A stretch of 64,000 nt of DNA from Styela clava (lineage: Eukaryota). Made by a program: the position numbers and the translations under genes. Positions 1 through 4,869 of this stretch are shown here, one piece after another. Below the pieces are notes generated by a model. That model was not told the DNA's origin. It saw only the letters and a list, made by a program, of their open reading frames with translations, and made no database searches. How positions within the stretch are numbered: position 1 is the stretch's first letter; every line of letters begins with the position of its first letter. The stretch covers positions 6,882,001-6,946,000 of the forward strand of contig NC_135261.1 in NCBI RefSeq assembly GCF_964204865.1, given 5' to 3'.

Positions 1-173
1 GAGCAATATAATCCGGCCAGCGACACTTCACTGAATTAGATTAACAAAAAAGCTGTATTGACGATTATATTCTTCATGCGAATGACTTTCAACCTTTCAT
101 TTTGGCCCACGAGCAACAAAAGTTGGCCGACCCCCGCTCTACATGCTAACTCATTTATCAAACCCTTTTTCAG

Positions 174-3100
174 AAAAATTCAGCGTTCGACAACAGATGA
201 AAGATGCTTTATTAAAGCTGGTTGAGAACAGACCTGAAGACCCACTGCTTTTTCTTTCCAATTTCTTTGATACTGTTTCTTCAGAAAACCGAGCTGACAG
301 GGTACGATTTAGTATAATTTTTATAATGAATAAAGTATAATAATTATAATGAATCTAGAATTTATTCAGGGTTCAGAGAAATATACACCCTAAACTGAAA
401 GTTATACTGTAAAAGTACAGTTGTAAAATGAAATTGTTAAATAGTATCTTTTAATATTATTTATCTGATTAAGCTATTTTATTCTTGCTATGATGATGCT
501 CTTTTTGGCACTGTCTGAATTATAAGTAACTTCAGAGGTTTTCTCTGAATGTTGCTTGATTCATTGATGACAGTCTGATATATGCGCTCACTAATCTGAA
601 TGCAAGATCATCTTCCTCTGTGAAATGAGAGTAGAATTATCATTTAAATTGAAATTCATTCAAAAATTCAATATGGTATAATAATGGTATCATATAACAT
701 CTGTATGAAAAATTCAATTTCAAATGTGTCAAATTCTGTGGATATTTATATTTGAAGCTTTAATAAATGTATTAACTCCAAGCTCATATACGATAAACTG
801 CTACTCCAGAAGTATGTGCACCAAGATGGCGGACACCGGAACGTCGTATGTGTACCAGGTTAGGGTTAGGCCATAATTTTATTCCAATTTTCCTTATTTT
901 AGTTCTATAACGGGTTCAGGGACTAGCCAAGTGACTCCCATAGTATTTGTACCTGAAATTATGGCCTAACCCTAACCTGGTGCACATACGACGTTCCAGT
1001 GTCCGCCATCTTGGTGCACATACGTCTGGAGCGCCGATAAACTATGTATGTTAAAATGATGAAAATAGGAAAAAACAAATTTGTAGTCTTAAAATTTTTT
1101 TTCTGATCATTTATTTTACCTGAATTCTGTCTATCTTGGTCACATGCTCTTTTTTTTAATTTTTTTTCTAGATTTCTCATGCTGCAAGAACGTTAAAACT
1201 GTCTCATCATTCGAGTCCTGCTTTCAATAACAACGTTATATTGGCATACGATATTCTTAGTGCACCTAAAAGTATGATTTTCCTTTATAGTATATTTGAT
1301 TTGTTAGCAAATTTTTTCTAAACATCAATTCTTTGCAAACAAATTCTTGCTATGATGATGCACTTTTTGGCACTGTCTGAATTATAAGTAACTTTGAAGG
1401 TTTTCTTTGAATGTTGCTTGATTCATTGATGACAGTCTGACATATGCGCTCACTAATCTGAATGCAAGATGAATTGATGTTTGATTTCATAACGAGTCGT
1501 TTGTTAGAAAAATTAGAGTGTAGATTAGAACAGGAATGGTCAAAATCGAAATGGTCAAATTTACTATACCAAATACATTCTGAAATTATAATTTTGAATA
1601 CAGAATAAAACGGGGCATGTTCCACAGAAAATTCATATATATACCATTTGAAATGAATAAAATTATATTTGATTATGCAGAATGTTCGAAATAACGTTAT
1701 TCAATATTTTCTTATTAAAGTATAAAAAGTAAAACTAATTTCATTTTTTATCTGGCTTTCTCATGTCACAGACTCAAGGTGACAAATTTCCAAATGGAAA
1801 TATACTAAAAAATATTTCTAAATCAGGAATTAAATATATCGAATATGATTGATTTCAAACGATTACATGCAGCCTCTACTTGGTGAGGACCAATTTGTAT
1901 AAATTTTGATTGGGCCTTTCTGGTTGATACATCAATTTTCCATACATCAGTTTTCCCAATCCAAAATTGATTTCTCCAGCAAAAAGGTTTATACATTCTT
2001 CTTTCCTTCAGACCCAAGTTCGAAGAAGCTTGCAAACAAACGTTCAGGAATGTCTGGAGCAATACATGAAGAATTTATCAAGTTTATTTGTTCCGATGTT
2101 CCTGATGAATTAAAAGAAAATCTTGTTGATAAAGTTTGTTGCAAGTGGAATGAAATGGTTCCATATGAAGTTTTCAAATACAGTGTTACTGTAGCTTATG
2201 TTTTGTTAGGTACGTGTACATTTTTTCATTTATTTTGCAAATTGTGGGATTTTTTGGATATTTATGTCTTGAATAGCAAGTGGCGTTTGTTGTTGTGCAA
2301 GTTTGATCCCAATTGGCAATTACCGTACTTTTTTAAATTTATTTTAAATTTTCTTATCCGGTAATACTTGAAGCATTTGTTTTTGTCATCATAAATCTAG
2401 ATATAGATAGTGAGATATGCAATAAATTGATGGATTTTTATGATGTTTGAAAGATATCTTGAAATCTTATTATCTACATCTGGGGTGTGCAAACTGCGGC
2501 CCGCGGGCCAAATATGGCCCACATAAAGAAAATTGTGCGCCCGCGGAGAAGTGCCAGCTAGCAAAATCCTGTTGCAAAATACACAATGTTATAAAAACTG
2601 TATTTCTCATTGAATTCGTTTACAGTCGGTGTGACAATCAATTTGAATAGCAGTTTTTTCTTTAGAAATTTATTCGTTTTAACTCGCATTTCTGCAAGGA
2701 CCCCTAGCAATGCCGTAAGATCAATAACAAAATGAAACGATTTTTCGTGCCTGCAACTACTAGAAAAGCTATCTTAAATAAAGGTGCCGACCCACGGATG
2801 CACTCATTTACTTTGTATCTAGCCTTACTGTGATGAAGATTGCACACCCCTGATCTACATTATTATTTTTCTCAATAAACAAATGACTCATTTATTTTCA
2901 ATTTTTTTTATTTCTCAACAAACAATATTTCACAGATTTTATTGAACTCTCTGAAGACTTGTTCAAAACCCTGAGTGGAAAAAATGAAATGGCCGACAGG
3001 TTTGTTATTATTTGAATTTTTTGAATTTTCAAATCAGATCATTTGTAAAAATATTTTCTTGCTATGATGATGCACTTTTTGGCACTGTCTGAATTATAAG

Positions 3101-4161
3101 TAACTTCAGAGGTTTTCTCTGAATGTTGCTTGATCTATTGATGACAGTCTGATATATGCGCTCACTAATCTGAATGCAAGATTTCCTTTACTTTTTGAAC
3201 AATTTTGTCTTAGTTTATTTTGCCAAAATTACCAAAGGAGTTTTATATTACCGGTATTTCCAAATTTCCATCCCAATCAAGCTTAAAGTTGATTCCTTAA
3301 TTTAGTTTCCATATTTCCAGATATTTATGTGATACTACTGTTGAAACGTTCAGTGAATCGTTGCTTCGAAGCAACAATAATTTTGTGAAATCTGATGACA
3401 ATTTTTCTCACGCAATGGAGGCAGGAAAGAAATTGAGACCCGATAATCTGGCCTCTGCTATGTTGCAGGTATCGACATTCGACATCAATATTATATCTGA
3501 ATAGTGAATTTACTAAAATTTATCTTTTCGTCTGATTTTAATTTTGTAAATTGCAAATTTTGCATTTGCATTAAGATTGCATTGCTTATGCACATGATTA
3601 ATAATAATTATATTACTTGAATAATAATACAACTACCAAAAACTTTTTAAAAACTTCAGCAAAGATTCTCCATTTTATTTCAGATTTTTAGGAGTATTCA
3701 ATTATTAAGTTGAAAATTGAAATTTATTCAAGTTTGCATTTCTTAATTTGAAATTATTCAAAGATGTCTTAATAATTCCTATAATGGTAATTATGAAAAT
3801 TTTACTCACCAAATCTTGGAATGTCAATTTTTAATACAATATGAATTGTATTATTATAATTTATCAGTAAATTTGCAAGAAAGAGGGAAAAGCTATTAAA
3901 CATATTTCGACATTCTCTTAATTTCCCTGATACCCTTTCTATTCTGATGAATAGTTTTAAGAGTTATGACGATTTGAAGTCTGTGCTTTTATCTTGTTCA
4001 CACTATAAACTTGTGAATTCATTTGCGGTTACTTGACTGACACAATTCTTTAATTTCAGGCGAAAGAAGATGAAGGGGATGCAAAAAATTTAATGGACGA
4101 ATCAGAATTTCTTCATTTAATGACAAATGTTTATCTTAGTAATGTCAAATGTTTAAAATAA
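174..4161 (+). CDS. TPGS1: Tubulin polyglutamylase complex subunit 1; 5' exon(s) lie before the window. Exons 174-301, 1172-1271, 2012-2209, 2936-2999, 3321-3468, 4060-4161
   Basis: GT-AG joins keep one frame to TAA at 4159-4161. The translation has TPGS1 hallmarks: MKDALLKLVENRPEDPLLFLSNFF, LSHHSSPAFNNNVILAYDILS, EMVPYEVFK..V..AYVLLDF, EAGKKLRPDNLASAM, MDESEFL. Confidence 0.9.
483..607 (+). ncRNA. Intronic box C/D snoRNA, copy 1
   Basis: Terminal stem TCTTGC/GCAAGA, box C ATGATGA (490-496), D' CTGA, internal hairpin, C' TTGATGA, box D CTGA (596-599). Repeated at 1345 and 3057 while the surrounding intron sequence is unrelated. Confidence 0.88.
800..1035. mobile_element. Palindromic MITE of a Merlin-like family (GG...CC ends, 8-bp TSD). 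Other members at about 10500-10686, 17814-17934, 20517-20633, 24442-24544, 29019-29257, 33598-33809, 44064-44172, 47128-47335, 55239-55348, 56966-57169, 57757-57853
   Basis: Long TIRs (AGTATGTGCACCAAGATGGCGGACAC...GGTTAGGGTTAGGCCATAATT). TSD GATAAACT here, GAATATTG at 17814, GAATTGTT at 55239, AATTTGTA at 56966. The superfamily is inferred from the termini and TSD length. Confidence 0.8.
1345..1469 (+). ncRNA. Intronic box C/D snoRNA, copy 2
   Basis: Same 125-nt unit. Its hairpin substitutions (TTTGAAG/CTTTGAA versus TTCAGAG/CTCTGAA) keep pairing through G-U wobbles and one compensatory pair. Confidence 0.88.
2480..2852. mobile_element. hAT-type MITE
   Basis: TIRs CTGGGGTGTGCAA/TTGCACACCCCTG, GCGGCCC subterminal motifs, 8-bp TSD ATCTACAT. 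Confidence 0.85.
3057..3181 (+). ncRNA. Intronic box C/D snoRNA, copy 3
   Basis: Same 125-nt unit with all boxes intact, in TPGS1 intron 3000-3320. Confidence 0.88.
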
Positions 4162-4869
4162 TGTAGTACTGTGTTTTATTCTTATTTACACTGTGCCATT
4201 TAGGTTGTTGAAGTTTTATTTTCTAGATATCTTTTCTATACTTAGTAAAACCATTTAGAATGCCAGGAAACTACTTTATTTTAAAATATTAAAATAGTTG
4301 AATGAATGAATATTTCTAAAAAGGGTTGTTATAGAGAGAGATTAGTTTGATTACCTCAGTGAAATGGTATTGAAATGATTTTGCTCTGTTAACGTTTTCC
4401 ATCGTTAAAGTTATTTATTTATATATATATATATATTTATATTTCAACCGGATATAAATACATATAAAATTACTGGTGTGTGAAGCATCTTCGGTTCAAA
4501 GATGTTTGTATTTTACATAAGTTTTGTCAATCTGGCGCTCCAATGGCTTATTGATAACATTCAATGAATTGTTGTGATTTGTATCATTCTAAAACTGTTT
4601 GTTCATTTTAATTAATGCTAACAAAATACCTAGATAATATATCAGCTATTTGTGGAAATTTTCAAAAATATTATTTTATCCGAATAATTTTCAATTATCT
4701 TCAATTTTTTTAAATTTCTTCAAGTTTTTTCTGTTGTGTGGTTTTATATTTAATGAGTTGTCTCTATCTGAATTCCGTGTTTTATGATGATTTCTCATTT
4801 ATAGATCTTTATTTTTCACAAAATTTATCCTTTGTTCTTGTAGTTTTTAAAATATATTTTAGATAAAAA

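What the first reader, a model, noticed from the sequence alone, without database searches (positions are those of the whole stretch)
483..3181. Three copies of an unrecognised 125-nt C/D snoRNA hosted in TPGS1 introns
Seen: one copy in each of three introns, with identical length, intact C, D', C' and D boxes, a terminal stem, and a long D'-C' hairpin whose substitutions in copy 2 preserve pairing. That pattern indicates selection on RNA structure. Known: multi-copy intronic snoRNAs usually sit in translation or ribosome-biogenesis genes, so a tubulin glutamylase subunit is an unexpected host. I cannot match it from memory to a named SNORD family.
Basis: partly seen in the sequence, partly recalled or inferred. 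Interest (0 to 1): 0.8.

Follow-up and report, generated by a model that had tools for sequence, protein, structure and literature searches.

The report
Four-copy intronic C/D snoRNA in TPGS1
A sea-squirt tubulin-glutamylase subunit gene (TPGS1) carries four near-identical copies of a 127-nt box C/D small nucleolar RNA in its introns. The RNA matches no catalogued family and probably guides a methyl mark on a conserved helix of the large ribosomal RNA, so it is a real but fairly ordinary new member of a well-known RNA class.

Summary
The unit is 127 nt, not 125. There are four copies, not three: window 482-608, 1344-1470 and 3056-3182, plus one 1.7 kb upstream of the window in intron 1.

- **Copies:** BLAST and a covariance model find no other copy in the 377-Mb genome.
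- **Conservation:** cores are 92-98% identical, while flanks sit at the shuffled baseline. All 12 variable columns avoid the boxes, the terminal stem and the D guide.
- **Host:** TPGS1-like, by Pfam TPGS1_C on exons 3, 4 and 6. Spliced contigs from three studies place each copy in sense inside a GT..AG intron.
- **Family:** Rfam gives no match.
- **Target:** the D guide pairs with the genome's own 28S helix 71 as 8 bp abutting box D, one bulged C (C2587, equivalent to human Cm3787), then 7 bp. Each half occurs only once in the rRNA. The +5 rule predicts Gm2583.
- **D' guide:** it has no target.
- **Weak points:** covariation is real but weak (one compensatory pair). The mature RNA is untested.

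Tunicate snoRNAs are largely uncatalogued. This scan's unchecked notes list other multi-copy intronic C/D families in this genome and the same bulged-C pairing on this window. Verdict: new member of a known kind, of modest interest.

The parts
482..608 (+). snoRNA copy 1 (127 nt), in host intron 2 (302-1171)
   Evidence: Alignment. BLAST and covariance-model hits. Intron bounds from spliced contigs.
1344..1470 (+). snoRNA copy 2 (127 nt), in host intron 3 (1272-2011). It carries the compensatory G-C to A-U change in the internal hairpin.
3056..3182 (+). snoRNA copy 3 (127 nt), in host intron 5 (3000-3320)
490..496 (+). C box AUGAUGA of copy 1. Same offsets in copies 2 and 3: 1352-1358 and 3064-3070.
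   Evidence: Read from the sequence. Invariant in all four copies.
497..514 (+). D' guide region of copy 1 (18 nt). No rRNA target. The distal 3 nt vary between copies, and 4 nt near its 3' end (unit positions 29-32) pair with the 4 nt after box C'.
   Evidence: 64 of 100 shuffles bind rRNA as well; genomic near-matches lie in a dispersed repeat; helix 29-32 with 90-93.
515..518 (+). D' box CUGA of copy 1
   Evidence: invariant.
523..558 (+). Internal D'-C' hairpin of copy 1 (15 bp, unit positions 42-56 with 62-77)
   Evidence: Folds. Pair counts: 11 invariant pairs, 3 one-sided changes that keep pairing, 1 compensatory change.
565..570 (+). C' box UGAUGA of copy 1
   Evidence: invariant.
579..595 (+). 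D guide of copy 1. It is complementary to the genome's own 28S 2579-2586 and 2588-2594, with C2587 unpaired. Same element in copies 2 and 3: 1441-1457 and 3153-3169.
   Evidence: -19.3 kcal/mol, matched by 0 of 100 shuffles; each half occurs once in the rRNA and the two sites are adjacent; only its first column (98) varies; the other 16 are invariant.
596..599 (+). D box CUGA of copy 1
174..301 (+). Host exon 2 (weak RIIa/Dpy-30-like motif)
   Evidence: Pfam. Splice joint 300/301 to 1171/1172.
1172..1271 (+). Host exon 3 (TPGS1_C profile positions 8-39)
2012..2209 (+). Host exon 4 (TPGS1_C profile positions 40-100)
2936..2999 (+). Host exon 5
   Evidence: joints; reading frame.
3321..3468 (+). 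Host exon 6 (TPGS1_C profile positions 125-167)
4060..4161 (+). Host exon 7, with the stop codon

Best explanation
This is a lineage-specific family of box C/D small nucleolar RNA genes. There are four paralogues, one per intron, in introns 1, 2, 3 and 5 of a TPGS1-like gene, all in the sense orientation.

Inferred mechanism:
- After the host pre-mRNA is spliced, each intron would be trimmed back to the RNA protected by the C/D kink-turn and its 6-bp terminal stem, giving a ~127-nt snoRNP.
- The 17 nt upstream of box D pair with the 3' strand of 28S helix 71 and the start of helix 70. The pairing is 8 Watson-Crick bp directly abutting box D (28S 2579-2586), then one unpaired rRNA cytidine (C2587), then 6 Watson-Crick pairs plus one G-U (2588-2594).
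- By the box D +5 rule, fibrillarin would 2'-O-methylate G2583. The distal helix would act as accessory pairing that helps the guide enter the stable helix 71.
- The C'/D' motif with its long closing hairpin is probably architectural. Its guide has no target, and 4 nt near its 3' end are sequestered by pairing.

Shown here: the copies, boxes, stems, intronic sense position, uniqueness in the genome, and complementarity to 28S. Inferred: processing to a stable RNA, protein binding, and the methylation.
For: - **Architecture:** all four boxes, the terminal stem and the D guide (apart from its first column, 98) are invariant in 4 copies. All 12 variable columns fall outside the 49 functionally critical positions. 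P=0.002 per column, or about 0.03 when adjacent columns count as one event.
- **Conservation:** cores are 92-98% identical, against flanks at the shuffled baseline.
- **Copy number:** only four copies in 377 Mb, by BLAST and by covariance model R1.
- **Host and orientation:** spliced contigs from three studies define GT..AG introns 302-1171, 1272-2011 and 3000-3320 on the + strand, each enclosing one copy.
- **Fold:** z-scores of -2.9 to -4.5 against shuffles.
- **Target:** the best rRNA duplex for the D guide is at 28S 2579-2594 (-19.3 kcal/mol, matched by 0 of 100 shuffles). ATTAGTGA and GCGCAT each occur once in 18S, ITS/5.8S and 28S, and they lie 1 nt apart.
- **Site context:** the site sits in the modification-dense helix 70/71 region (PMC4174444; PMC5027482).
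- **Precedent:** short guides aided by extra base-pairing, and conserved but guide-inactive C'/D' motifs, are documented in yeast and human (PMC3116282).
Against: - No read-level evidence for a discrete 127-nt RNA. Only assembled contigs of probable poly(A) RNA were available, and they cover copy 1 weakly and together with intron flank.
- The contiguous guide duplex is only 8 bp before the bulge, which is short for a canonical guide.
- No methylation is reported at the equivalent guanosine in yeast. Gigova et al. list only A2280, A2281 and G2288 as ribose methylations in helix 70/71. It is also not named in the main text of the human map.
- The copies lie 138-1,800 nt from their 3' splice sites. 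From memory (Hirose and Steitz 2001), mammals favour about 70-80 nt.
- No relative from another species could be examined.
Confidence: 0.55

Rival explanations
1. It is a real C/D snoRNP that binds the same 28S site but does not methylate it. Instead it would act as a transient folding chaperone that holds the 3' strand of helix 71 and the start of helix 70 open during pre-60S assembly, in the manner of U3, U8, U14 or snR190.
For: The duplex is interrupted by a bulged rRNA nucleotide and has only 8 contiguous bp next to box D. No methylation is known at the equivalent G in yeast. Chaperone-type C/D snoRNPs exist (PMC11879421, abstract seen).
Against: The pairing starts exactly at the nucleotide before box D, which is the geometry of a methylation guide. 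The boxes are perfect consensus. Chaperone snoRNAs usually have longer or multiple antisense elements, and none was found here.
Confidence: 0.15
2. It is the fast-evolved tunicate counterpart of a known family that acts on helix 71. Candidates are SNORD10/mgU6-77 (human Cm3787) and SNORD15/snR75 (G at the base of helix 71). Its guide would have slipped register and it would be too diverged for Rfam to recognise.
For: The guide covers the same rRNA segment, and the unpaired C2587 is the homologue of human C3787, which SNORD10 methylates. It is a long C/D RNA like those, though their lengths are from memory. No canonical SNORD10-type guide was found elsewhere in the genome at <=1 mismatch. Tunicate snoRNAs are known to escape homology searches.
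Against: No Rfam family scores above chance on any copy. The +5 nucleotide is G2583, not C2587 or G2571. Sharing a target region is not homology.
Confidence: 0.1
3. It is an orphan C/D snoRNA whose true target is not rRNA but an mRNA, snRNA or tRNA. The 28S match would then be coincidental.
For: The D' guide has no rRNA target. Orphan snoRNAs are common.
Against: The joint probability of the two unique rRNA matches lying adjacent and abutting box D is about 1e-4 by my estimate. No perfect or 1-mismatch genomic complement of the D guide lies in a recognisable RNA gene. There is no target in the host locus. Only rRNA was scanned systematically; snRNAs and tRNAs were not fetched.
Confidence: 0.07
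4. It is not a stable RNA at all, but a repeated intronic element such as a mobile repeat, a retroposed snoRNA pseudogene or a splicing-regulatory hairpin.
For: Mature RNA was not demonstrated.
Against: There are only 4 copies, all in one gene and one orientation. By contrast, the palindromic MITE in the same intron gave about 2,000 first-pass candidates genome-wide, of which the 40 scored are about 90-93% identical. There are no poly(A) tails or target-site duplications at the sharp unit edges. The conservation pattern follows snoRNA functional elements.
Confidence: 0.05

Closest known systems
SNORD10 (mgU6-77), the guide for human 28S Cm3787
   Same: It is a box C/D snoRNA whose guide covers the 3' strand of helix 71. 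The cytidine it methylates (human C3787, which pairs with G3771 at the base of helix 71; PMC5027482) is the homologue of C2587, which sits inside this RNA's target duplex.
   Different: Here that cytidine is left unpaired between two helices, at positions +8/+9 from box D rather than +5. No Rfam model matches. Complementarity to U6 was not tested against this genome's own U6.
Yeast snR75 / human SNORD15A (Gm2288 / Gm3771 at the base of helix 71)
   Same: It acts on the same helix 71. snR75 depends on extra base-pairing adjacent to its guide for full activity (PMC3116282), like the bipartite pairing proposed here.
   Different: It targets the 5' strand (G2571 in this genome's numbering), whereas this RNA pairs with the 3' strand and points at G2583. 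There is no sequence match.
Multi-copy intron-encoded C/D snoRNAs, such as U14 in hsc70 introns or the snoRNAs of ribosomal-protein and UHG/GAS5 hosts (from memory)
   Same: One copy per intron, sense orientation, several paralogues within one host gene.
   Different: The host is a tubulin polyglutamylase complex subunit rather than a translation-related gene. The family itself is not catalogued.

Membership tests
Box C/D snoRNA (class) | C box RUGAUGA near the 5' end and D box CUGA near the 3' end | tested here: met
   AUGAUGA at unit positions 9-15 and CUGA at 115-118, invariant in 4 copies.
Box C/D snoRNA (class) | Terminal stem that brings C and D together | tested here: met
   A 6-bp stem (2-7 with 121-126), paired in 100% of cells and found in every fold. 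The pairs never vary, so there is no covariation evidence.
Box C/D snoRNA (class) | Internal D' and C' boxes | tested here: met
   Consensus CUGA (34-37) and UGAUGA (84-89), closed by a 15-bp hairpin.
Box C/D snoRNA (class) | Antisense element of about 9 or more bp abutting D or D', placing an rRNA or snRNA nucleotide at +5 | tested here: inconclusive
   D guide: 8 contiguous Watson-Crick bp from position 1, then a 1-nt rRNA bulge, then 6 Watson-Crick pairs plus 1 G-U. The site is unique in the rRNA. D' guide: no target.
Box C/D snoRNA (class) | Intronic, sense to the host, one per intron (animal type) | tested here: met
   Spliced contigs define the introns on the + strand, with one copy in each of introns 2, 3 and 5. 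Copy 0 lies in intron 1.
Box C/D snoRNA (class) | Accumulates as a discrete RNA bound by fibrillarin, Nop56, Nop58 and 15.5K | not testable with these tools
   Only assembled contigs of likely poly(A) RNA were on hand.
SNORD10 / mgU6-77 | The guide places the helix 71 closing cytidine (human C3787) at +5 | tested here: not met
   C2587 is unpaired between the two helices. The +5 nucleotide is G2583 (site mapping).
Any Rfam snoRNA family | Score at or above the family's gathering threshold | tested here: not met
   0 hits at gathering thresholds in the whole window. The best hit on a copy is SNORD53/92, 16.7 bits against a cut-off of 46, E=9.5.
SNORD15 / snR75 | The guide places the G at the 5' base of helix 71 (human G3771, yeast G2288) at +5 | tested here: not met
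   That G is G2571 here. The guide pairs with 2579-2594.
Acetylation-guide C/D snoRNAs (SNORD13, snR4, snR45; definition from memory) | Two antisense elements flanking an unpaired cytidine of 18S helix 34 or helix 45 | tested here: not met
   No significant 18S complementarity. The unpaired C is in 28S.
Dispersed mobile repeat or retroposed snoRNA | Many scattered genomic copies, often with poly(A) tails or target-site duplications | tested here: not met
   4 copies at one locus and no tails or duplications. Compare the neighbouring MITE, with about 2,000 first-pass candidates.

The most novel reading that the evidence does not exclude
The interrupted guide duplex is itself the point. By pairing on both sides of C2587, the snoRNP would extrude the helix 71 closing cytidine, the position that vertebrates 2'-O-methylate with SNORD10. 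That would either allow modification of a bulged nucleotide outside the +5 rule or present it to another enzyme. This would be a non-canonical C/D guide mode on large-subunit rRNA, resembling the bipartite acetylation guides known for 18S.
Probability: 0.05. Interest if true: 0.65.

Novelty: new member of a known kind. Interest (0 to 1): 0.3.

Why it matters
If confirmed, this adds an uncatalogued C/D snoRNA family to the ascidian repertoire. It also predicts a ribose methylation in helix 71 (intersubunit bridge B3) at a position not modified in yeast.

It gives a concrete case of a short guide extended across a one-nucleotide rRNA bulge. That case bears on how much irregularity C/D snoRNPs tolerate.

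It is also one more example that animal snoRNA hosts are not limited to translation genes. None of this overturns current understanding, because homology tools are known to miss most tunicate snoRNAs.

Tried and rejected
- **Ungapped antisense scan:** scanning the whole snoRNA against 18S and 28S gave only G-U-rich chance matches. The 28S site appeared only once a bulge was allowed, after a lead from scan note s1-829500.
- **D' guide:** no rRNA target. Its 1-mismatch genomic complements lie in a dispersed repeat with no Rfam match, so I treat them as chance.
- **Near-matches to the D guide:** the 1-mismatch sites elsewhere lack a D box, so they are not paralogues.
- **Targets in the host locus:** none for either guide in the 64-kb window.
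- **Extra pairing to 28S:** other snoRNA parts show only a trivial 7-mer match to 28S 2480-2700.
- **Canonical C2587 guide:** a pattern search found none at <=1 mismatch. This is not exhaustive.
- **Wrong Rfam accession:** I guessed RF00591 for the U6-77 family. It turned out to be SNORD77 and the result is irrelevant.
- **Metagenome scan:** guide plus D box gave 0 hits.
- **Protein atlas:** the look-up of exon 4 was unavailable.
- **Literature:** no paper links TPGS1 with snoRNA hosting.
- **Exon handling:** host exons were searched one by one.
Full report
**What is there.** Reading window 1-4200 and aligning the three stretches with 20-nt flanks confirms three units of identical length. They run from TTCTTGC to GCAAGAT at 482-608, 1344-1470 and 3056-3182 on the + strand. 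Similarity stops within about 2 nt of the unit ends.

A BLAST of copy 1 against the whole 377-Mb assembly found exactly four places, all on contig 16 within 5 kb. The fourth, copy 0, lies 1.7 kb upstream of the window (L004 1501-1627). A covariance model built from the four copies (R1) again found only these four.

By contrast, the 230-bp palindromic element in the same intron (arms 804-879 and 956-1031) gave about 2,000 first-pass candidates genome-wide; the 40 scored are about 90-93% identical.

**Anatomy.** Unit positions are as follows (add 481, 1343 or 3055 for window coordinates).
- Terminal stem: 2-7 with 121-126.
- C box AUGAUGA: 9-15.
- D' guide: 16-33.
- D' box CUGA: 34-37.
- 15-bp hairpin: 42-56 with 62-77.
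- C' box UGAUGA: 84-89.
- A 4-bp helix: 29-32 with 90-93. [quoted passage not shown]
- D guide: 98-114.
- D box CUGA: 115-118.

Unconstrained folds are more stable than shuffles, with z from -2.9 to -4.5.

**Evidence for selection.**
- The four cores are 92-98% identical. The 120-nt flanks are 59-61% identical, which equals the shuffled baseline of 58%.
- One exception is a partly shared downstream flank between copies 0 and 2. Those two copies also share variants.
- The 12 variable columns are 19-21, 52-54, 64, 66, 77, 80-81 and 98. All avoid the 49 positions made up of the boxes, the terminal stem and the pairing part of the D guide. P=0.002 per column, or about 0.03 if adjacent columns count as one event.
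- Hairpin covariation exists but is weak. There is one compensatory pair (54-64, G-C to A-U in copy 2), three one-sided changes that keep pairing, and one broken cell in copy 0. 118 of 500 shuffles do as well.
- An RNA-derived contig over copy 1 carries variants otherwise typical of copies 0, 2 and 3 (table 3). This suggests allelic variation or gene conversion between the copies.

**Host.** I searched the exons one at a time and made no joined protein. Pfam TPGS1_C (PF24480) matches in colinear order:
- exon 3, profile positions 8-39, E=1.9e-8;
- exon 4, positions 40-100, E=8.5e-13;
- exon 6, positions 125-167, E=6e-4.

Exon 2 gives weak RIIa/Dpy-30 matches.

Logan contigs of four runs from three studies carry spliced joints. 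These define GT..AG introns 302-1171, 1272-2011, 2210-2935, 3000-3320 and 3469-4059 on the + strand. The reading frame is kept across all of them.

Copies 1, 2 and 3 therefore sit in sense orientation in introns 2, 3 and 5, and copy 0 in intron 1. Introns 4 and 6 hold none. The runs are coded as probable RNA, and their spliced contigs show that the host gene is expressed.

These contigs cannot show a mature 127-nt RNA. Coverage of copy 1 is weak and continuous with intron flank, and copies 2 and 3 are not covered. Stable accumulation therefore remains untested.

**Family.**
- Rfam 15 gives no hit at gathering thresholds anywhere in the window.
- With permissive filters on 300-3400, the only snoRNA-type hit on a copy is SNORD53/92, at 16.7 bits against a cut-off of 46, E=9.5.
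- A survey of ascidian ncRNAs found only 12-24 recognisable snoRNA families. It states that tunicate snoRNAs have not been systematically studied and evolve too fast for homology searches (PMC5006418). An unmatched C/D snoRNA here is therefore expected.
- According to earlier unchecked scan notes, this genome is a sea squirt.

**Target.** I took 18S and 28S from the same genome. An ungapped scan gave nothing convincing. The scan's note s1-829500 on this window suggested a bulged cytidine.

RNAduplex then placed the best rRNA partner of the 16-nt D guide at 28S 2579-2594, at -19.3 kcal/mol. Shuffled guides averaged -14.3 (sd 1.5), and 0 of 100 were as good.

The 8-mer complementary to guide positions 1-8 from box D occurs once in 18S, ITS/5.8S and 28S, at 28S 2579. 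The 6-mer complementary to the next part also occurs once, at 2588. They are separated by the single base C2587. I estimate the chance of this arrangement at about 1e-4.

The +5 nucleotide is G2583.

**Mapping to yeast and human.** I mapped the site using this genome's own sequence together with statements in two papers.
- G2571 and C2587 close helix 71. They correspond to human G3771 and C3787, both fully 2'-O-methylated, the latter by SNORD10 (PMC5027482).
- They also correspond to yeast G2288 and C2304. Yeast m5C2278, Am2280 and Am2281 fall on C2561, A2563 and A2564 here (PMC4174444).
- G2583 therefore equals yeast G2300 and human G3783, in the numbering of those papers.
- Neither paper's text names that position as methylated.

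Short guides helped by adjacent extra base-pairing, and conserved C'/D' motifs without an active guide, are documented (PMC3116282; PMC5389607).

**The D' guide.**
- It has no rRNA partner better than shuffles: 64 of 100 shuffles do as well.
- It varies between copies in its distal part.
- Its only near-perfect genomic complements lie in a dispersed repeat.

**Reading.** The most likely account is a genuine, lineage-specific intronic box C/D snoRNA family. Its D guide targets 28S helix 71, probably to methylate G2583, with the distal helix acting as accessory pairing.

Three less likely accounts remain: a non-methylating chaperone role at the same site, a diverged SNORD10-like ancestry, or an unrelated target. 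The C2587 bulge, at a site that vertebrates methylate, is the one odd feature. The tools here could not resolve it.

**Comparison and score.** This is a new member of a known kind. The host is unusual by vertebrate standards. However, unchecked scan notes list similar multi-copy intronic C/D families in MYBBP1A, CRTC and hnRNP R/Q of this genome, and no paper links TPGS1 with snoRNAs. Interest is modest.

Noticed in passing
window 804-1031 (intron 2): A near-perfect palindromic 230-bp element: 76-nt arms, 96% complementary, containing a TTAGGG-like doublet. It gave about 2,000 first-pass candidates in the genome; the 40 scored are about 90-93% identical. In all four RNA-type runs the summed contig depth over it is enormous (about 57,000-146,000, against about 25-220 for the host exons), so this MITE family is heavily represented in transcripts.
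   Followed up: partly
window 2461-2871 (intron 4): A second MITE-like insertion with about 35-nt terminal inverted repeats (GGGGTGTGCAA...) and an internal GC-rich palindrome at 2485-2522. RNA contig depth is raised here too (about 180-525).
   Followed up: no
G000:C16:6880237-6880363 (L004 1501-1627), upstream of the window: The fourth snoRNA copy, in intron 1 of the host. Its downstream about 50 nt resemble the downstream flank of copy 2 (69% against a 58% baseline). The two also share core variants, so they are the most recent duplicates, or partners in gene conversion.
   Followed up: partly
window 533-579 (copy 1): A contig from run X6 over copy 1 carries C533T, A534G, T561C, C562T and T579C. 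These are the states seen in copies 0, 2 and 3, which suggests an allele shaped by gene conversion among the paralogues.
   Followed up: no
G000:C14:12454214-12559484 and other contigs (L023, L027-L032): A dispersed repeat, about 92% identical over 260 nt, also arrayed at a period of about 21 kb on contig 14. It contains an 18-mer complementary to the D' guide apart from one mismatch. I judged this a chance match. There is no Rfam match.
   Followed up: partly
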